From Utricularia gibba (lineage: Eukaryota > Plantae > Magnoliophyta), in contig NEEC01000004.1 in assembly GCA_002189035.1 (NCBI GenBank), forward strand, positions 186,001 through 250,000: a DNA stretch of 64,000 nucleotides, given 5' to 3'. The first letter of the stretch is position 1. Every line of letters starts with the position of its first letter. Under the pieces are notes generated by a model. The model did no database searches, was not told the origin of the DNA, and saw only the letters and a list, made by a program, of their open reading frames with translations. The translations under genes and the position numbers were made by a program. Below, piece by piece: positions 35,404 to 47,916 of this stretch.

Positions 35404-36221
35404 ATGGAGTCCCCTGATGAGACTTCGTCTGTATTGGAGAGAATTCGCCAGCATCTTCTTGATGATTCTGCTTTCATGGAGACGTACTCTTCCTTTTCAA
35501 TCGACTCCCAATTCTCAAGAAGCAGTAGCGATGCGAGTTCGGTTGTTTCGGATTTCACTTTCACTTCTTCCCCCGTGTCGGCCGATATGGGGGTTTCCCC
35601 TTTTCTGATGGATTTCGCCGCTCCGGAGGCGCAGTTCCTCGATTGTGAAACCAAACCCGTGGTTGGGAAGCAGAACAAGAAGCGTAAGCCTGAAATCAGC
35701 GTGACGATTCCGTCGGCGGAGCCGGAGAGGAAGGTGGATTGGGTTTTCAGTTCAGAGACCGCGGCAGTGGAGGATCGTCGACATTACAGGGGGTGAGGCA
35801 GCGACCGTGGGGGAAATTCGCGGCGGAGATACGGAACCCTAATAAAAAGGGTAGCCGTATCTGGCTGGGGACATACGATACCCCCGCAGAGGCGGCGCGT
35901 GCGTATGACCGGGCGGCGTTCGGGTTGAGGGGTAGCAAAGCGATACTCAATTTCCCTCTCGAAATCGGAAATTCCATGGCGGCAGCGGTGGATGATAGGA
36001 ATCTGAAGAGGAAAGTCGAAAGCATCGAAACCACTAAAGTGGCTGCCGAAGTGAAGACAGAGGTAGCGCAAGCCGAGTGCAGTGGCACCATGCCGATGCC
36101 TCTTACACCCTCAAATTGGACGGCGGTTTGGGATTGTGGCAACGGAATATTCGAGATCCCGCCGCTATCGCCGTTATCCCCTCATCCTAGCTTCGGGTTC
36201 CCCGGGGTGATAGTCGTCTGA
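35404..36221 (+). CDS. AP2/ERF transcription factor, ERF5/6-like (group IX), with a one-base frameshift at 35789-35793
   Basis: HYRG | [14 protein letters not shown]...[21 protein letters not shown]...AILNFP is split across two frames. C-terminal [10 protein letters not shown] motif. Confidence 0.92.
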
Positions 36222-37537: not shown

Positions 37538-38388
37538 CTGGTGCAGGTTTCTTCAACTTATGCTTCTTCTACCTATCTGGTGTGCCTAGTCTTGTACTCC
37601 AATTAAAAAAGCATAAGAACTTGTCGGTGTGTCGCACTTCTATCATGATGAAATTAACGTTATTGCAAACTTAATTTCACTGCGGCAAACAGTCCATGGG
37701 AGAGGGCTTGTGAATGTGTTGTGTGGTGTGGGAATCTTACTTATCAGCCAGATGTTAAGTAGATTCACCTCTCAATATGGCTAGCACTCCTATTCATTTT
37801 TTTCGTTTTATAGTAAAGAGGAGATTGAGGGGAAAATGTTGAAATTAAAGATATTATGGATCGGATGAATATGTATGTGAAATTCAACTATATCTAAAAA
37901 TGTGAATTATATTAAATTAATTAAACATAATCAATTATTAATGAATTATAATATTTTATATATTTGATCACATCATTTTAGTTGGATAAGAGATTTAATT
38001 TAATGTCCCCTCCCCCTCCCTTGTCAACTGACATTGCTCCGATTAAGAAGTTTTATGTCATTATAATTAATGATTGAGTCATAATTTAATTTTTTTTTTA
38101 TTGAAACTCACACCAACACAAATATATTTTTGCTATTGAAATCCCGACAAATGTATATAAAAAAAAACGTAAATTATATTTAAAAATATTAGATTAAAAA
38201 GATTAATTAATTATGATTTTTTATATGAATTTATTTTATTCTAATGAAAACAGTTAAAAACGAAGGTAAAAAACTGTATAGTTATCAGTCCGGGATTTCG
38301 GTTATTTCATGGACTAATTTACATCGTCCACAGGGAGACCAGCAAACACTTGAGTTTCGGACACGTCCGGAAATCGAGGACGCTAGTG

Positions 38389-40145
38389 CTAGTGCGAGTT
38401 CTCGTCCACGAACTTCTTCCAGTACCAGTGCCGTCTCCAGATCTTGTCCATCTTCTCAATCGGCACGCCCTTCGTCTCCGGCAACAAGAAGAATACGAAC
38501 GCCGTCATCACCGCGATCCACGCCCCGAAGAAGAAGAACACCCCGGATTTCATCTTGCAGAGCATCGCTAGGAACGCCTGTGCGATCACGAAGGACATCA
38601 TAAGGTTTATGGATGCGGCTATGCTCAGCCCTGCCGATCGAATTTCCAGCGGGATGACCTCGCTCGGAATCAAGATGCCCAGCACTCCCACGACAGCCGA
38701 ATGCGGCCACGAAGATGCATATCAGGACCAGAAGAGCTATGGAGTAGGGTTTGCTCAGCGCCCCGTGGTCTCCCAGTTTAGCAGCCATCAGTGATCCTAC
38801 GATCATCTGTCAAACACACGTGATCGGATTCTGAGAAGTGAGTCATCTGCAATTTCAACCATTATATTGACAGAGAAGAGGGCGAGGCGTTACCTCGCAT
38901 ATGAGCATGATGATCCCGCCTATGAGGAAGAGCTTTCGCCGGCCAACCCTGTCGACCATCAGCAATGAGGCAATTGAAGATAGGATGACTCCGAGCCCAA
39001 TGATGACGGAGTTAAACAAGGCGGCTTTCACGTTGGAGCCGAAGGTTCGAAAGAGGAGCGGCGCGTAGAATCCGAGGACGTTTATGCCGGTGAACTGTAG
39101 GAAAAACGGCATGGTGATGGCCATCACCAACTGCGGTCGGTACTTCCGTTGGAAAATGCTCTTGAAGGGGTGCTTAACGGCGGCAGACACTTGGCTGGCC
39201 GCGATGATGTCCTCTAATTCCGCGGTTACGTCTTCGATTCCACGAATTTTCTGCAACAATTTCGTCGCGTTTTCTCGAGTCTCCCCGTTTTCAATGACGT
39301 TGTTCGGAGTCTCCGTGAGAAACAGACCACCTATCATGATCAGCACCGCCGGAGACGCCGCCATTGCCAGTGAAACCCGCCACCCCATCCTTCTTTAATG
39401 CTGTTAGTGAAGTAGTTGATGACGTTTGAAGCCAAAACTCCGATGGCAATACAGAGAAAGAAAACAGAATTCAACGCTCCCCTGTACTTCGCGGGTGCCA
39501 TTTCAGACAAATACAAAGGCGCAGACTGCAGAAGCATAAAGTCGATTAGCCATAGTTGTTTTGTATAAACCCATAGGAGACAAGCAACAGAGCATCAAGT
39601 ACCCACCTGACTTGTAAAACCAATGCCAACTCCCAACATCGCACGCCCAATTATGAGCATGTAAATGTTGACGGCGGCGCCGCAGAGGGCGGCTCCGATG
39701 AGAAAACAAAACCCCCCTATAAGGATCGAGATTTTCCGGCCCAGTTTTCGGGTCACTGGCGAAGCGAAGAAGGAAGAAATGAGGCCCGATAGGTAAAGCG
39801 TAGAAGTGAAAAGAGTGAGAACTTGGCTATCAAATAAGCAGTAGTTGCTGGCCTCTTTGTCTCCCAGAATCTGCTTGAAGATACTCGGAAAGAATTTCTC
39901 CAAAAATGGCACCATTGCAGACACCCCACCTACTCCAAAATTTCTCAGCTTCATCAAATCAATCATAACAAAAACACATGATGACACTTCTGCTTTTCAG
40001 ACAGCATACCCGTTACTCCGAGGTCGTAGCCAAATATGAGGCCGCCGGAGCCAGCCACGACGCAAGAAAGCAACACCATCCCCGTGATCTTGCCTCCATA
40101 CTCGACCCCATCAGCTGCACCAGCGATCGCTACTCCAACAGCCAT
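38389..40145 (-). CDS. Sugar transport protein, STP3/HEX6-like, divergent copy 1 (4 exons, three one-base frameshifts)
   Basis: Exons 40145-40010, 39929-39607, 39525-38894 and 38806-38389. MFS motifs [23 protein letters not shown] and [10 protein letters not shown]. Frame breaks at 39383-39386, 38696 and 38687-38689. Confidence 0.9.
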
Positions 40146-41511
40146 GAGCGATGCCTAGTCCTAGGCTCGGGCTGAGCTGCAACATGCCACACTAACCATA
40201 GACGACTCCATATTTATAAAGTGACATCAACTGCACGTTATTACACAAGGTCAACTTACGCTAATTTAATTCGCTAGGCATATGCATTCCTACACTATTA
40301 ACACTCCTTGACTTTATGAAGAGGCACCCACCCCCTTGTCTTAAATTTTAATGTCCGTTTTCATTACATGTGCATCAGTTGCCATTTTTCCAACTCTTGA
40401 TCTCAGAGTTAATCCCTATGGGAAATGATCAGCAGACAATCCCATGCTTTTTCTTCTTACAGCGGACCATAACTTCGTGCCTCCTATTCCACTATTACTG
40501 AGAGTTGTCGAAAAGAAATTGTGTTCTTCATTTAAAGGGAAAAATGCATTACGTGTACTCTACGACTCAACTAGAGACGATGCCGTGGGGATAAGGCAAT
40601 TAGAGCCATTGGTGATGTCCATTAATGATGCTATCTTTTTTGTTATATTTTTGGCTGAAGCTATGACTTTGCTTCTTCTTTTGAGGTATAAAAGAACTTG
40701 TGTCATGCGACATACGGTGATTGACTTTGTTTTACTCTTAGGAAGTCATTACATTCGACATGTTTATTATGTATGGTTAAGAAAAAGGTTAGGGAATTAA
40801 AGCACTTAAGGGGAATGAGGTTAAAAGTGGCATTTTAAGACACAGGGTTGGCCCTCGGCACAAATCCAAGTTGCAAGTCAAATTTGACGAGTTAGGATAA
40901 AATATAACTCGTTGAATCACGGATTGGATACCAAAACTCGAATCACACAATGAATTAACCTGAATTGAATGATTAAAATACAAGTATTGTATTTATTCTA
41001 ACTAGTACTTATTATAATTTGCGAAGTAAAACAGCATCACAATTAACACAATACAATCTCTACACTTAATTGATGATGGTCATAACTTATAAGTAAATAA
41101 ATATGAGTTGATTGAGATCAAATTTGAATAAAAAAAATATAATACAATTCGTACTCATTAAGTACGAATACGAGTCATTCGGTCAACTTGTACTTGGGCC
41201 GAGGGGTACATGATAAAGAAGAAAGGTAAAAAATTGCATTTCATGTTGGTTTTGTACCTACACTGGGCCTGGTACCTTGGAGTTTGAAGCCTTTGAAGGG
41301 AACTGGTACTGGGCCAATTCATGGCTGAATAGCTAACAACCAAAAGCTCAACAAGACGGCCCAGACATTCTAAACCTTTTTATTACTACAACTGGTCTGT
41401 CTGCACTCTGCATCGCCTATCGGATCAGTGTGAGTTATTAGAAATTTGAAGAGAACGACACACAAGCAACAAAGGCATCAATCGCCATTCTCGGGTAACT
41501 CGCCGGAGAAA

Positions 41512-43211
41512 TCACGTTGCTTCGGACTTCTTACCGTCCTCCAGTATCTCGTTGCCGCCGAGTACTCGTTTCCAGAAAAAATGCTCCCTCCAGATCTTGT
41601 CCATCTTTTCAATGGGGATCCCCTTCGTCTCCGGCAACAAAAAGTAGACAAATATCGACATCAGCAGAACCCACGACGCGAAGAAGAAGAAAATCCCGGA
41701 CTTGAAATGGCACAGCATCGCCAGGAAAGCCTGGGCAATTACAAACGTCATCCACAGATTCACCGCCACCACGATACTCTGCGCCGCAGATCGGATTTCC
41801 AACGGGAAAATCTCGCTCGTCACCACCCACGCCAGCGGACCCCATGAGAGCCCGAATCCGGCGATGTAAATGCACGTCAGAATTACTACGACTAAGGCGT
41901 ACCCTTTATCCATCATTCCATGGTCGCTCAATTTGATCCCCATTAATACTCCCACAAGCGATTGGCAGACAAGCATTTGAATTCCTCCGATGTGGAACAG
42001 CATCCTTCTTCCCAACCTATCCACGAGAATCACGGTGATCAGAGTGAACGTAGAACCGATGATTCCGGTGACGGTGGCGGCTAGAAGAGACGTGCTTTCT
42101 CCGCTTCCGAGTGTGAGGAATAGGATCGGGGCGTAGAAGGCGATGACGTTGATTCCGGTGATTTGCTGGAAGAATGGCATCAGTACGGACATCACCAGCT
42201 GGGGTCTGTATTTCCTCTGCATCAGATTCTTGAATGGTTTTTTAATGGCTTTAGAAGCGTAGCTGGCTGCTATTAGATCTTTTAGTTCTTCGTCTACATC
42301 ATCTGTTCCTCGGATTTTGCGTAACACTTCCTTTGCTTTGTTGTTATCTTTCCCCTGTTCGATCAAGCTGTTGGGTGTCTCTGGCACGAACAAAGCACCG
42401 AATGCGAGAATCAGAGCCGGTACTCCGGCCATCCCTAACGACACCCGCCACCCCCAGCCCCCGCGGATCCTCACCGTGCCGTAGTTTATCAGCGTCGCTA
42501 AATTGTACCCTATGCTCACACATATCTGAAACGCCACGTTGAACGCTCCTCTGTATTTCGACGGCGCCATTTCCGAGAGATACAGTGGTACTGACTGCAG
42601 GGTGGTGACAACAATTAGAGGAGGCGGATAATATAACTTATTTCAACCTGCAAGCTACTGGAAAGGTGATGAGTTTGAGTTGGTCACCAACCTGATTGGT
42701 GAAACCGAGGCCAACACCCAGAAGAATACGACCAAGAATGAGCATGTAAATATTGAGAGCTGCTCCGCCGAAGGCGGCGCCGAACATGTAAGCGATGCCA
42801 CCGATGATGATCGAGATCCGGCGACCGTAGTTTCGGGTCACCGGAGCTGCGAAGAAGGATGAAATAAGGCCGGCGATGTAAAGCGAGGAGGTGAAGCACG
42901 TCAGAAGCTGGCTGTCGAACTTGCAGTAGTTGCTTATCCTCTTGTCCTGTTTCATGTTTCTATAAACTCCCGGAAAAAATTTCTGAAGAAATGGATCCAT
43001 GGAGGTCACTCCCCCTGCAACCACAAATTAACTAAATCATCCCCATGCACAAATCAAGTATAACGAACAGAAAAAGCCCACCCGACACTCCGACGTCGTA
43101 ACCGAAGATTATCCCACCGGAGGCGGCGATCATGCACGACAGGAGCACGAACCATGTGATTCTGCCGTTGTACTGCCGGTCGTCGGCGTTAACGGAGATT
43201 CCCACCGGCAT
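41512..43211 (-). CDS. Sugar transport protein, STP3/HEX6-like, intact copy 2 (3 exons)
   Basis: Exons 43211-43082, 43014-42692 and 42594-41512 are in phase. Motifs FGYDVG, SNYCKFDSQ, FFQQITGIN, SWGPLAW and LPETKG. Confidence 0.95.
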
Positions 43212-45242
43212 CTTTTTTCCGGCGCCGCAAGGTATTTTTCACAAGAAATGTGGAATTTTTACGCTCAATAGAAGGTCGAAACAGCGGGTGAATTTATAGC
43301 AAATTGTCGGACGCCACGTCTGAATTTATGCTTGAATATTATTTTACATATATCACATGGGCTTGGGCCTCAATATATCGAAATAATTAAATGGGCAAAT
43401 AAATATTTACCTTTTAGACCCTTACCCAAAGCGTCCTCTTGGTACGAGGAGTGTATCTCGTTGTCAATGTTTATTGGAAAATAAAAAAAAGTATTTGTAT
43501 AATATTTGTTGTGGAAGCATAAAGTGTTGTAAACAAATCCTAAGAAGGTCTCAATCCTCGATGATTCCAAAGGGATTATTGCTTCTCATTAACAAAATCA
43601 ATGGGATTATTATCTTTTCCAAGTCCTCTTTTTGGATTCCTCAAGCTTTCCCATTCCCGTAGTCATCTCTATTGCGTGCGTTTCTGTCACTTCTTGATGG
43701 CATGCTTTTGATCTCCTGATTTCAATGCGTACTACAGTTTAAAAAGGAATGTGGGTTAGTAGAAATAAGCTTGATTTTTGTATAACTTGTACACTAGAGA
43801 TTCACGTGCATGAATTTCAACAGATTGTGATTGTTTGAAGTGGATCCTAAGCTGAGTTCTCCCTAGAAGAACGAATATTTGTAGCAGTTTTCAATGCTGA
43901 TCAACGTCTCTATTTGCAGGATGGCATCGTGCTTGTTAGAGCCTCCATCTCTCAATGCACAACAGACATGGAAAGAGTGCCTCCTTTTTGTGTTGAGTGT
44001 TGTTGATGGGAAGCTGTGTGCTCAGATTTAGTCCTATTCCATGCGTTTCTCTCCCACACGGATAAAGCAGTGCAGAGGCTGGGGACTACCCCATTACAGC
44101 GAAGTGCATTTCAGGGTTAACCGTCTGGTTCATGGAGAATATATGCTATGCTATGCTTTCTAGATGATGAAAAGTATTCTTTCCCAGAAAAGAGAAGTTG
44201 GGGTCTCACGACTTCTCCTAGCAGTGCTCTTCATTGCATCCACCAATCACGACTTGAGTGAACCATTAGAATTTGGTCTGGTCTGGCTTCATCGTACCAG
44301 AGCATGATCATGGAAACGGACTCCTCTCTGTACCCAGTACGAGCCATGAACTCTGAAAGGTACCCCGCATCTGGGATTGAAGACGAAAGGCCAAGTGGTC
44401 AAAGGCAAAGCACAACAGATTCTGAGAATTTAATTAATGGCTAATATCCCATGGATGGAAAGGAGGAAAAAGTAAAGCACATGCTTCCAGATTCCAATTA
44501 TAATCACTCCCTCCCAAAGCTCTTTAATGTTACCTGTTAATCACTAAAAGGTAGGTAATTATGCCAGAGCTAAAGCTGACTCAAATCTAGGGTTTTCTTA
44601 TCATCTCAGCTCGTCATACCCAGTCTAGGGTTTACTCCCATTCGAGGCATGATTCACTTGATATAGTTAAAGTATGATTTACTTGGTTTATAGGAAAAAA
44701 AACTAAAGATGATAAGCAAACATAATTTGCTGAGATCCAAGAGCTTATTAAAATCACACCACCAAACATTTTGGTATTTGATACTACATCTTTTTTGTGT
44801 GTTTATGGTGCAAATCATTTGTGAATGGCATATGTTCTAACTTTCCCAGTATGAGACATTTGTGTCGTAAACTTTATTCAGACATACGCTTTCTGCATGT
44901 GGATGGGAGCCCCAAACGGCAATCTGGGTTCATTCTGATATCTAAATCAAACCGATAGTATGCTTTCCATCCAGCCGCTTGGTACTTTTGGTTGAACGAA
45001 TTACTGGACATGGGTGTGGATGATGGTGCAGAGGGCCCATACAATTTGGGAGATTTTTAACTCATGTTATCTTCGAAAGGGTATCTGCATCCTTGTCCCA
45101 GTTGAACATCTGAGCTGCACCTCCAGTTTTTCTACATTTGAAATGGATCAAGAAACCAACTTTTTACTCAGCAAAATTGTGCTTTACGGTACTGAAAAAT
45201 GAAGTAGCCATGACAACGTTGTTTAGAAAGGAATGAATCAAA

Positions 45243-47916
45243 CTAAAGTCTTGGATGGCAGTTTGGTTCAGCATTCTGAGAGGAGACCACCCACTCCTTT
45301 AGCGCGCTCGTCAGCTTTCTAAGGTCCGCGCTGGTGTGCGCTGCGCTTAGAGTTACTCGCAGCCTGAAGTGAAGTGATGCCAAAACAAAAACAAATCAAG
45401 ACCCTGATGAGAATACAGGAACACGGGATCCAACGGATGGGGAAGAAGACCCGTTAACCACATTAAAAATTTCGTTCTAGAATATCTCATCTCATGTGTG
45501 GGAGTATTCCTTGTCTCATAAGGAGATAAAGTGTTCAAACTTCAGGGGTAGCTCATGCAATTTGGTATGAAGGTGTATTGGGACAAACCTGCAGGAGTTT
45601 GGCGGTACAGTTGGGGGTCTTATAGCAGTGACATGAAATCCTGATTTGAGAAGGTACCTGTGTTCATGAGATGATGTTAGAATCAATCATGATATCTATC
45701 TTCTCAAAGACAGGGTGCGGAGATGAAATGCAGGGGTAAGAAGATAACTGGCTGGCTTGCAGGGCCTTTTCTTCACTCCCTACAACCATGGAGATGATGT
45801 GGCTTTGCACACGAATTCCAGTCAAGATATGGAATTCCTTTACGCGTTTCCATATTTCATTTCGACGCCATGCTTCCTTCTTTGATACCATGATCGCAGC
45901 TGCATTAGCATACACTAAGGAAACATGGGTACTGTTCTGATCTTGCAAACAATTGTGATAAGAGAATTCTCTAAACTGACCAAGAGATGCAGCAGCAACG
46001 GGAACTGTTGTCGAGGTTGAGAATATGAAAGATCGCCCACGGGATTGGATCAGCAGCTTCCATTTCTTGCTAGAAATCGACAGAATCAAGTAATCACAAA
46101 CAAGTTCATAGTTCGTTGCTCCTTTAATCACATAAATGTTGCCTTTTCAAGAACATTGAAGCAAAAGGACTTTGCATCATAAAAACAGTACACACCTGCA
46201 AGCAATGAAACCACCATGGCACCCAGCAGCTTTACTGAGGGTGCCAACGCAAATGTCTACATCGTTCTCACAGTTGAACATCTCAGCCGCACCTCCGCCA
46301 CTTTCTCCACAAACAAATGTCGCGTGGGCCTACATATTTTAAATGAAAAAGCATTGTAGATTCCGTATGTGCATTAAGAGCCATAGAAGCACCGTAACAG
46401 AATCTCAAAAAACTCACATCATCAATCACAAATAGAAAGCCATGCTTCCTCCGGAGTTTCACAAGTTCAGACATTGGGGCAAAGTCACCATCCATGCTAA
46501 ACAGACTAGCAACAAAGAAAACTGGTCTTAAGCTAGTAAAATTTTTCAAGAAAACGGAATGTAGTGAGCATGAAGTTAAAAAATCACCCATCCATTCTAA
46601 AAGGTGCAAGAACTAACAATTGGCCATTAAGCCTTTGAACTGCCATGAAATGAATGGAGACAAATCTAACCTATCTGTGACAACAACTTTTTTCTTCAAC
46701 GGACATCCCAACCTGTCAAGATTTCAAAACCCAAGTAATAGGTGGAAGTAAACATTAAACTTAATCAAGAAGCACATAATAGGAGATAGCCTACAGTAGA
46801 ACATCAAGATGGTTCATATCGCAATGCTTGTAGACAAAAGTCACTACATTTCCTTGTTTCTCAGCAAGACGAAGCCCATCAATAATTGATGCATGGTTCA
46901 AGGAATCGGAAAAGATAGCCACTCGATCATCTTTTGAAGGTTTTCCATCTGTTAGGAGAGAAGCAACACTTCCTATCGCAGTCATCACAGCCATGTTGGC
47001 TGAAAAGCCGGTTGGACAAAGAAGGCAATCCTAAAAACTAGCATTAGAACGATGATGAAATCAACATGGGATAGCGGGATGCAGATGAATTTAGTAATTT
47101 GGTAAGGAATAAGGTCGAGCACTTGCATTATTCATACTGATTGGCACCGCTATTCTCAAATGATTGGTACCTCTTTTCTTTTCAAATCAGCCAAGCATGA
47201 TTCCAGTAGCCTATGATGATTTGTATATCCACAGATTAAAGCTGAACCTCGTGGACCCATTCCATATTGTTGAGCTGCCTGTATCCAACACAAAGAAGGA
47301 TAAACCATGAATTCTGCATTAGAAGAATGCGCCCTTTCTCATTAAAATCACTCAAGATCAAAAATTTTGCATGCCTTGCTAGCTGCACTACAAATCACTG
47401 GATGCGAGCTCAGTGATAAGTAATCATTTCCAGAGAAAATGATTAGTTTTCTAAGCTTTCCATGAGTTAAACCACCTTCTAAATCATCCGTTCCATTCAC
47501 CTTCACGAAATCGTTGTCATCCCCTGCAACCAAAACTCGGATTCTCAAATTAAGAGCACCATGCAGGAACATTAAACCAAAAATTTGCATTTCTGTCCAA
47601 ACGAAATATCCAAATAGACAAAAAAAAAAATGCAACAACAAAAAATCAAACCTGAACTGGGTACATCATGCAGCCATTTCTGGAACGTGGATTCTGAAAC
47701 CATCACTTCGACGGAGTTCCTATCCCACTTTCGGGGACCATCAAAGAACTGGAGATGTTCACCGTGCTCCAATGGATAGCTTCCAGCGGGAAATGATTCC
47801 GCCTTCCCGGGATTCTGGAGGCAAATGGGGCGAAGTGAGCGCAGAAGTTTGAAACTTTGGAGCTTTGAGATGGCACCATCGAGCCAGTCTTCCCATCGAA
47901 AGTCAGCTGGCTCCAT
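45243..47916 (-). CDS. BIOF: 8-amino-7-oxononanoate synthase (biotin biosynthesis, PLP-dependent)
   Basis: Motifs FSGNDYLSLSSHP, GMGPRGSALICGY, FSDSLNHASIIDG, SLFSMDGDFAP, GFHVTAIRPPTVP and RLRVTLSAAHT. The last exon ends CHPRL-stop at 45243. Confidence 0.93.

What the first reader, a model, noticed from the sequence alone, without database searches (positions are those of the whole stretch)
38389..40145. STP paralog keeps proton-coupling residues but has a remodelled, more hydrophobic sugar pocket
Using recalled AtSTP10 numbering, copy 1 keeps Asp42 (FGYDLG), Arg142 (IGRAMLG), both lid cysteines (SNYCLF, MLCKM), Gln296, Asn301 and Asn433. It replaces Gln177 with Phe (NSVFFLC, codon 39457-39459), Gln295 with Leu (FFLQFTG, 39098-39100) and Trp410 with Ile (GVLGILIP, 38674-38676). 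The adjacent copy 2 retains all three (FQIC, FFQQIT, GPLAW). Targeted loss of glucose-contacting residues with intact coupling machinery suggests a neofunctionalised H+ symporter for a non-hexose substrate, or a sensor. Relaxed selection in a dying copy is the alternative.
Basis: partly seen in the sequence, partly recalled or inferred. Interest (0 to 1): 0.75.

Follow-up and report, generated by a model that had tools for sequence, protein, structure and literature searches.

The report
Sugar transporter paralog with rebuilt pocket
One of two neighbouring sugar-transporter genes in this small plant genome (order Lamiales) is intact and transcribed and keeps its proton-driven transport machinery, but it has replaced several residues that normally grip the sugar, so it probably no longer carries ordinary sugars well, and what it carries instead is unknown.

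Summary
Copy 1 (38389-40145, minus strand) keeps Asp42, Arg142, both lid cysteines, Gln296, Asn301 and Asn433.

The frameshifts are assembly errors. Read contigs add one base after 39382 and two more within 38493-38711. A 1643-nt spliced RNA contig covers the whole gene and removes three introns exactly. The gene is therefore alive and expressed.

It is the very fast-evolving member 'B' of an A-then-B tandem pair of HEX6-type STP genes, found in the same order in Paulownia. Its end branch is 5-9 times that of copy 2. Its changes mostly avoid conserved columns (14% changed, against 57-72% at variable ones). Radical changes concentrate on sugar ligands (3 of 8 ligand columns against 4 of 189 others, p 0.0014).

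Two results weaken the adaptive reading. A divergent accession still has Gln295. Recent pN/pS is about 0.64, which cannot be told apart from neutrality.

Best reading: a retained proton-coupled carrier with lost or shifted sugar specificity under relaxed constraint. Slow decay remains a serious rival. No ortholog sharing the changes was found.

The parts
38290..40176 (-). Copy 1 transcript as seen in RNA-derived contig X5 record 11 (1643 nt, three introns removed)
   Evidence: tables 5 and 8
40010..40145 (-). Copy 1 exon 1 coding part (ATG at 40145). Holds Phe39, Asp42 (codon 40023-40025) and Leu43.
   Evidence: The joint 39927/40008 (cut +2) fits.
39930..40009 (-). Copy 1 intron 1 (80 nt, GT..AG)
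   Evidence: table 5
39607..39929 (-). Copy 1 exon 2: lid domain with Cys77, K78L (39835-39837) and the aromatic cluster, plus Arg142 (39643-39645)
39526..39606 (-). Copy 1 intron 2 (81 nt)
   Evidence: table 5
38894..39525 (-). Copy 1 exon 3: Q177F (39457-39459), Q295L (39098-39100), Gln296, Asn301 and Val332 (38987-38989)
39382..39383 (.). Assembly undercall. Reads add one C (+ strand) between these places, making a C4 run into C5, which removes the exon 3 frameshift.
   Evidence: table 4 (X8 and X5)
38807..38893 (-). Copy 1 intron 3 (87 nt, GT..AG). Spliced in X5. Absent from copy 2 and from both Paulownia genes.
   Evidence: table 5
38389..38806 (-). Copy 1 exon 4 with stop at 38389-38391: Phe401, Gly406, P407V (38683-38685), W410I (38674-38676), Q426L (38626-38628), Asn433 and Cys449
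38686..38696 (.). Two further single-base undercalls must lie here. Reads hold two more letters within 38493-38711. Homology runs in one frame up to 38696 and in another from 38688. The third frame between them reads Ser-Trp, as in the family motif. The letters themselves were not shown.
   Evidence: table 8 (X16 record 4, X5 record 11); reading
41512..43211 (-). Copy 2: ordinary HEX6-type STP with two introns (42595-42691, 43014-43080). Keeps Gln177, Gln295 and Trp410. Transcribed.

Best explanation
Copy 1 is a living gene. It is the Lentibulariaceae-lineage descendant of member 'B' of a Lamiales-wide head-to-tail pair (A then B) of HEX6-type Sugar Transport Protein genes.

Shown here:
- It is transcribed and spliced at three introns, and its frame is open over 504 codons once three single-base assembly undercalls are allowed for.
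- It keeps every residue known to drive the STP transport cycle: the proton pair Asp42/Arg142, the lid disulfide, the lid aromatic cluster, the gate tyrosines and the cytosolic salt-bridge networks.
- It has lost three of the eight family-invariant sugar ligands (Q177F, Q295L, W410I). It has also changed residues beside them (Val332, P407V, I297F, and K78L at the lid entrance).

Inferred:
- It still works as a proton-coupled rocker-switch carrier.
- The polar cradle for a monosaccharide has become half hydrophobic, so high-affinity sugar binding is lost. Q177A alone raises the Km of STP10 37-fold.
- The gene is kept under weakened constraint for a different, broader or low-affinity substrate.
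- The order of events appears to be Phe177 and Val332 first, and Q295L last, because a divergent accession (X8) keeps those two but has Gln295. Codon 410 was not covered in X8, so the timing of W410I is unknown. In GLUT1 the equivalents of Gln295 and Trp410 hydrogen-bond to each other, so loss of the Trp could have freed the Gln.
For: - Spliced 1643-nt contig with 0 other letters, and three read-supported single-base additions.
- Machinery residues all kept. Ligand list and Asp42/Arg142 role from PMC6345825. Q177A 37-fold Km effect from bioRxiv 10.1101/2020.11.05.369397. Same ligand set in STP6.
- Changes avoid conserved columns: 14% changed at columns at least 95% conserved, against 57-72% at variable ones (Mann-Whitney p 2.5e-25). 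Of 7 radical changes at conserved columns, 3 fall in the 8 conserved ligand columns (Fisher p 0.0014).
- Against Paulownia, pN is 0.235 while pS is 0.79 and saturated.
- If the excess change at conserved columns came from a neutral phase, the chance of no stop is about 0.09 and of no frameshift 0.002-0.04 (the indel rate is assumed).
- Placement in clade B: 96/85 and 97 support. Same A-then-B order on one strand in Paulownia.
- GLUT9 precedent for replacing the Trp, and the Q282-W388 bond in GLUT1 (PMC12171873).
Against: - Recent divergence from run X8 gives 8 non-synonymous to 4 synonymous changes in exons 2-3 (pN/pS 0.64). This does not differ from 1 and rejects 0.15. Both lineages have hit conserved positions: Q295L in the window, M163I in X8.
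- Q295L is therefore polymorphic or very young.
- No ortholog sharing the changes was found, so there is no test of selection on the changed sites.
- The exon 4b tree is unresolved, and copy 1 is a long branch in every tree.
- The letters of the two exon 4 additions were not displayed.
- No transport datum exists, and no candidate substrate can be named from sequence.
Confidence: 0.5

Rival explanations
1. The gene is on its way out. After the A/B duplication, copy 1 became redundant in this lineage. Constraint on sugar binding lapsed and the pocket drifts toward the hydrophobic residues typical of membrane helices. The gene is still expressed and open only because it has not yet been hit.
For: - Recent pN/pS of 0.64 is compatible with 1.
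- Q295L is not shared by X8, and X8 has its own change in the conserved SEMAP motif.
- 27 of 197 conserved columns are changed, against 4 of 199 in copy 2.
- The end branch is 5-9 times that of copy 2.
- Other clade-B paralogs in Lamiales also lose key residues, including Asp42.
Against: - No stop and no real frameshift in 504 codons.
- Changes strongly avoid conserved columns, and all cycle and coupling residues are kept.
- A neutral phase long enough to explain the conserved-site changes would probably have broken the frame.
- The gene is retained and transcribed in a very compact genome.
Confidence: 0.3
2. It is still a sugar carrier, but a low-affinity one or one with shifted sugar preference (for example pentoses or deoxy-sugars). 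Gln296, Asn301, Asn433, Ser437 and Phe401 would suffice to bind the ring.
For: - Five of the C-domain ligands and Phe39/Leu43 remain.
- Q177A STP10 still transports, with a Km of 737 uM.
- Single methyl-group changes shift STP specificity.
- Gln295 is Val or Ile in Oleaceae HEX6-type proteins that otherwise look normal.
- The clade has Gly332, which removes the contact to the C6 hydroxyl.
Against: Three hydrogen-bonding ligands are lost together and bulk is added (Phe177, Phe297, Val332). Gln177 and Trp410 are kept in 98-99% of 127 relatives.
Confidence: 0.12
3. It is a sensor (transceptor) that signals without transporting.
For: None specific. Only the general precedent of non-transporting sugar-porter sensors in yeast (from memory).
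Against: There is no added cytosolic tail: the C-terminus ends as in the family. Full conservation of proton-coupling and gating residues is what a working carrier needs.
Confidence: 0.05
4. It is a true pseudogene with real frameshifts.
For: The window sequence itself shifts frame at 39382 and near 38690.
Against: Two independent runs add the missing base at 39382. Two runs add two letters in exon 4. The corrected lengths (136+323+633+420 = 1512) are a whole number of codons. A fourth undercall of the same kind lies outside the coding sequence at 41322, seen in three runs.
Confidence: 0.03

Closest known systems
Arabidopsis STP10 (PDB 6H7D, 7AAQ, 7AAR), a high-affinity glucose/H+ symporter
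   Same: Sugar_tr fold, lid domain with the Cys77-Cys449 bridge, Asp42/Arg142 proton pair, aromatic lid cluster, salt-bridge networks, and ligands Phe39, Leu43, Gln296, Asn301, Phe401, Gly406 and Asn433
   Different: Gln177, Gln295, Asn332 and Trp410 are replaced by Phe, Leu, Val and Ile. Also P407V, Q426L and K78L. The pieces are about 50% identical to STP10 by eye.
HEX6-type STPs of Lamiales, clade B (Paulownia Pfo_014994, Rehmannia DH2020_034043, Striga 'STP3', Erythranthe)
   Same: Nearest relatives: 61-63.5% identity and the same starred clade in the exon 2 and exon 3b trees. Same position downstream of the clade-A gene on the same strand in Paulownia. Shared Ile328.
   Different: They keep Gln177, Gln295, Trp410, Pro407 and Gln426, and have Thr43, Gly433 and Ile437 where copy 1 has Leu, Asn and Ser. 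They have Gly332. They have no intron at the copy 1 intron 3 site.
Copy 2 in the same window, with its orthologs (Paulownia Pfo_014993, Genlisea aurea M569_14469)
   Same: Tandem neighbour, same strand, same first two intron positions, 57% identical
   Different: Ordinary. It departs from the family at 4 of 199 conserved columns, all ligands are of the family type, and its branch is short.
Human GLUT9 (SLC2A9), a urate carrier in the sugar-porter fold
   Same: A sugar-porter member that changed substrate class. The Trp equivalent to GLUT1 W388 (STP10 W410) is replaced (F435 in GLUT9; PMC12171873).
   Different: A facilitator, not a proton symporter. Only distantly related. It is a precedent for the idea, not evidence for it.
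Arabidopsis STP7, a pentose-specific STP (Rottmann 2018, cited in PMC12054785; not readable here)
   Same: Some HEX6-type hits carry the automatic name 'Sugar transport protein 7'. The clade's Gly332 would fit a substrate without a C6 hydroxyl (inference).
   Different: Whether the HEX6 clade is orthologous to AtSTP7 was not tested here.

Membership tests
Sugar porter family (Pfam PF00083 Sugar_tr) within MFS | Profile match above the curated cut-off | tested here: met
   Exon pieces score 59.1, 118.7 and 65.5 bits against a cut-off of 22.3
Plant Sugar Transport Protein (STP) subfamily | Lid domain with the Cys77-Cys449 pair and the aromatic cluster Phe55/59/60/79/87 and Trp202 | tested here: met
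   All present. Definition from PMC6345825.
Plant Sugar Transport Protein (STP) subfamily | Proton donor/acceptor pair Asp42/Arg142 and conserved cytosolic salt-bridge networks | tested here: met
   D42, R142, R111, E162, R169, E225 (Asp in STP10, Glu in the clade), T226, D344, E415 and R422 are present (for the networks)
Plant Sugar Transport Protein (STP) subfamily | Conserved polar monosaccharide ligands Gln177, Gln295, Gln296, Asn301, Trp410, Asn433, Thr437 | tested here: not met
   Phe177, Leu295 and Ile410 replace three of them. Gln296, Asn301 and Asn433 are kept, and Thr437 is Ser.
Plant Sugar Transport Protein (STP) subfamily | Proton-coupled monosaccharide uptake | not testable with these tools
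   Needs uptake assays
HEX6-type STP clade, Lamiales subclade B | Groups with clade B in trees | tested here: met
   Exon 3b tree: 15-row set at 96/85. Exon 2 tree: 15-row set at 97. Exon 4b tree unresolved. Copy 1 is a long branch, so placement carries that caveat.
HEX6-type STP clade, Lamiales subclade B | Position in the tandem array: B lies downstream of A on the same strand | tested here: met
   In Paulownia, Pfo_014993 precedes Pfo_014994 on the same strand by overlap of L001 and L002. In the window, copy 2 precedes copy 1 on the minus strand.
HEX6-type STP clade, Lamiales subclade B | Clade-typical pocket states Gly332, Thr43, Gly433 | tested here: not met
   Copy 1 has Val332, Leu43 and Asn433
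Unitary pseudogene | Real frameshifts or stops, no intact transcript | tested here: not met
   Reads remove all three frameshifts. A spliced full-length contig exists.
Unitary pseudogene | Substitutions blind to site conservation; pN close to pS | tested here: inconclusive
   Long term: not met. Recent: pN/pS 0.64 on 12 changes cannot be told from 1.

The most novel reading that the evidence does not exclude
Copy 1 is the first STP-family carrier to have left sugars altogether. It would be a proton symporter for an amphipathic or hydrophobic small molecule, with the polar half of the old sugar site (Gln296, Asn301, Asn433, Ser437) facing a new hydrophobic wall (Phe177, Leu295, Phe297, Val332, Val407, Ile410). 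It would have been recruited in a bladderwort-family plant.
Probability: 0.15. Interest if true: 0.75.

Novelty: new variant of a known kind. Interest (0 to 1): 0.42.

Why it matters
STPs are the plant cell's main monosaccharide importers, and their ligand residues are almost invariant from bacteria to humans. A natural, expressed STP that keeps the proton engine but has swapped three or four of those ligands is a ready-made experiment. It can show which residues set substrate class, as opposed to affinity, in the sugar-porter fold. It could also reveal a non-sugar substrate for this family.

It is a practical warning as well. In this assembly, single-base undercalls (at least four in 5.1 kb here) make live genes look like pseudogenes.

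Tried and rejected
1. Searching for orthologs that share the changes:
- The 163-aa exon 3b piece found only fragments of at most 55% identity, and the length limit shuts out full-length proteins.
- The copy 2 query and a profile of Paulownia_14994 plus three copy 1 pieces gave 209 proteins. None was closer than 63.5% to copy 1, and its own full-length product was not among them.
- A first alignment (A1) misplaced the last piece onto the internal repeat and was dropped.

2. Codon-level dN/dS against Paulownia: synonymous sites are saturated (pS 0.78-0.83), so no ratio can be given.

3. The Genlisea aurea contig carrying the copy 2 ortholog. I hoped to find a copy 1 ortholog downstream. The neighbours are unrelated genes that match nothing in the window.

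4. Literature. No paper held both 'STP7' and 'HEX6', the STP7 paper is not held, and nothing relevant was found on sugar transporters of Utricularia.

5. Not used: the large representative search. Clusters at 50% identity would hide an ortholog that is about 60% identical to ordinary STPs.

6. Rejected: a real pseudogene, and a third STP copy in the window.

7. Run X1 held 95% of the sampled words but laid no contig on copy 1. Run X8 left codon 410 uncovered.

Full report
WHAT IS THERE

The window holds two sugar-transporter genes head to tail on the minus strand. Copy 2 lies at 41512-43211 and copy 1 at 38389-40145. All pieces match Pfam Sugar_tr far above the cut-off. Their best solved relatives are Arabidopsis STP10 and STP6.

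My gene model for copy 1:
- exon 1: 40145-40010
- intron 1: 40009-39930
- exon 2: 39929-39607
- intron 2: 39606-39526
- exon 3: 39525-38894
- intron 3: 38893-38807
- exon 4: 38806-38389

In the window the frame breaks after 39382 and again near 38690.

THE FRAMESHIFTS ARE ASSEMBLY ERRORS AND THE GENE IS EXPRESSED

I laid contigs of four public runs on 38250-43350.
- Run X5 has one 1643-nt contig running from 40176 to 38290. It skips exactly my three introns (CT..AC on the + strand, which is GT..AG on the gene strand). It has 0 other letters, one extra letter in exon 3 and two in exon 4.
- The exon 3 addition is a C after 39382. It is also present in X8, a DNA run from another study. It lengthens a C4 run to C5.
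- X16 independently shows two extra letters within 38493-38711.
- Homology runs in one frame up to 38696 and in another from 38688, and the third frame between them reads Ser-Trp as in the family motif. Both additions must therefore sit in 38686-38696. Their letters were not displayed, so residue 403 is unknown.

With the additions the exons are 136+323+633+420 = 1512 nt, or 504 codons.

A fourth undercall of the same kind lies at 41322 in the copy 2 3' region, seen in three runs. The assembly is simply indel-prone here.

Copy 2 is also represented by a spliced contig.

THE RESIDUES

The 7aaq_A chain carries native STP10 numbering.

Kept: D42, R142, C77, C449, Q296, N301, N433, F39, L43, F401 and G406.
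Changed: Q177F, Q295L and W410I.

The ligand list comes from the STP10 structure paper (PMC6345825), and STP6 uses the same set (PMC12054785).

- Val at 332 (Asn in STP10, where it contacts the C6 hydroxyl)
- P407V, next to Gly406
- Q426L
- K78L, beside the lid cysteine
- I297F, T437S, G193F and P224T

Also kept are the lid aromatic cluster, the gate tyrosines 76 and 306, and every cytosolic salt-bridge residue named in the second STP10 paper.

WHICH FAMILY, AND HOW UNUSUAL

Copy 2 is up to 80% identical over its 352-aa ORF (81.5% summed over all three pieces) to Lamiales proteins annotated HEX6. Copy 1 reaches only 63.5% to anything. Its best matches are Rehmannia 34043, Paulownia 14994 and Buddleja 134000/133900. 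It is 57% identical to copy 2.

- Exon 3b puts copy 1 in a 15-row Lamiales clade 'B' with those proteins (96/85, starred). Copy 2 falls in clade 'A' (100/98) next to Paulownia 14993 and Genlisea M569_14469.
- Exon 2 agrees (97). Exon 4b is unresolved.
- The end branch of copy 1 is 1.14-1.44 changes per column, against 0.16-0.23 for copy 2.

In Paulownia the A gene lies upstream of the B gene on the same strand, as in the window.

The whole clade has Gly, not Asn, at 332, so its ancestral substrate need not be glucose. Some members carry the automatic name STP7. Arabidopsis STP7 is reported as pentose-specific, but I could not read that paper or test orthology.

CONSTRAINT

Against 127 full-length family members:
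- Copy 1 differs from the majority at 14% of columns that are at least 95% conserved, at 40% and 57% of intermediate columns, and at 72% of the most variable ones (Mann-Whitney p 2.5e-25). Most of its history was therefore under purifying selection.
- Even so, 27 of 197 conserved columns are changed, against 4 of 199 in copy 2.
- Seven of those changes are radical (BLOSUM62 of -2 or lower). Three of the seven fall in the 8 conserved ligand columns and four in the other 189 (Fisher p 0.0014). Of those four, P407V sits beside a ligand and K78L beside the lid cysteine.

Against the Paulownia orthologs, synonymous sites are saturated (pS 0.79). pN is 0.235 for copy 1 and 0.124 for copy 2.

A simulation asked what would happen if the excess change at conserved columns came from a neutral phase. 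The chance of no stop is about 0.09. The chance of no frameshift is 0.002-0.04, under an assumed indel-to-substitution ratio of 0.05-0.1.

RECENT HISTORY

Run X8 is a divergent accession or sibling taxon. It differs by about 1.3% in copy 1 exons and by about 13% plus indels in the spacer. In exons 2-3 it differs from the window by 8 non-synonymous and 4 synonymous letters. That gives pN/pS 0.64, which rejects 0.15 (p 0.014) but not 1. By hand, exon 1 adds 2 non-synonymous and 1 synonymous change.

One difference turns the Leu295 codon CTA into CAA, which is Gln, the ancestral state. Q295L is therefore young or polymorphic.

No X8 difference is listed at codon 177 or 332; one of the contig's 14 differences is not shown in the table. 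Codon 410 was not covered.

X8 has its own change at a conserved site, M163I in the SEMAP motif.

In GLUT1 the equivalents of Gln295 and Trp410 (Q282 and W388) hydrogen-bond, and in the urate carrier GLUT9 that Trp is Phe (PMC12171873). I infer that loss of the Trp may have freed Gln295.

READING

Best reading (0.5): a retained, proton-coupled rocker-switch carrier whose monosaccharide cradle has become half hydrophobic. High-affinity sugar binding is very probably lost, since Q177A alone costs STP10 37-fold in Km. The gene now evolves under weak constraint for a different, broader or low-affinity substrate.

Rivals:
- slow decay of a redundant copy (0.3)
- a low-affinity or shifted sugar carrier (0.12)
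- a sensor (0.05)
- a true pseudogene (0.03)

No substrate can be named from sequence.

LIMITS
- No ortholog with the same changes was found.
There is therefore no full-length search, tree or fold of copy 1.
- Run and organism names are coded. A bladderwort is my guess only.

Noticed in passing
window 39382, 38686-38696, 41322: The assembly is one base short at these four places relative to read contigs of two or three independent runs. At 39382 and 41322, where the added letter is known, it lengthens a run of one letter. Three of the four fall in the copy 1 coding sequence and mimic a pseudogene.
   Followed up: yes
window 38807-38893: Copy 1 has a third, 87-nt GT..AG intron that is spliced in RNA. 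It is absent at the same place from copy 2 and from both Paulownia genes (A and B), with no residues missing around it. This looks like a lineage-specific intron gain. It has no repeat elsewhere in the window.
   Followed up: partly
proteins P0156, P0159 (Paulownia 14998, 14996), P0162, P0163, P0166 (Sesamum), P0154 (Buddleja 133400): Several clade-B HEX6-type STPs of other Lamiales have Val, Ala or Gly in place of the proton-site Asp42 while keeping Arg142 and the sugar ligands. They may be uncoupled or inactive paralogs in the same tandem arrays.
   Followed up: no
proteins P0055 (Forsythia), P0076 and P0141 (Olea): Oleaceae HEX6-type STPs carry Val or Ile at Gln295. A hydrophobic residue at this ligand position has therefore arisen independently elsewhere.
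   Followed up: no
L003 2659-4149 (Genlisea aurea KE534278.1): The Genlisea relative of copy 2 is intronless (1491 nt for 497 residues). It sits between an Autophagy_act_C gene and a DAGK_cat gene, neither of which matches anything in the window. It may be a retrocopy or a relocated gene.
   Followed up: partly
window 40410-41249: Run X8, labelled as the same organism, differs by 82 letters and 15 gaps in 635 bases of the spacer between the two genes. It replaces 204 bases (41045-41248) by 305 other letters. It also shows two contig variants over 39919-40062. It is a divergent accession, haplotype or sibling taxon.
   Followed up: partly
window 38418-38500 and 41669-41777: Contigs of X8, X5 and X16 match only the conserved C-terminal stretch, then run on into unlike sequence or jump between copy 1 and copy 2. 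They are most likely other STP paralogs elsewhere in the genome, or assembly chimeras.
   Followed up: no
window 35739-36221 (+) and about 45200-47900 (-): Flanking genes. One ORF has an AP2/ERF-type DNA-binding motif. A multi-exon gene has translated pieces that look like a class-II aminotransferase of the 8-amino-7-oxononanoate synthase kind. Both were identified by eye only.
   Followed up: no
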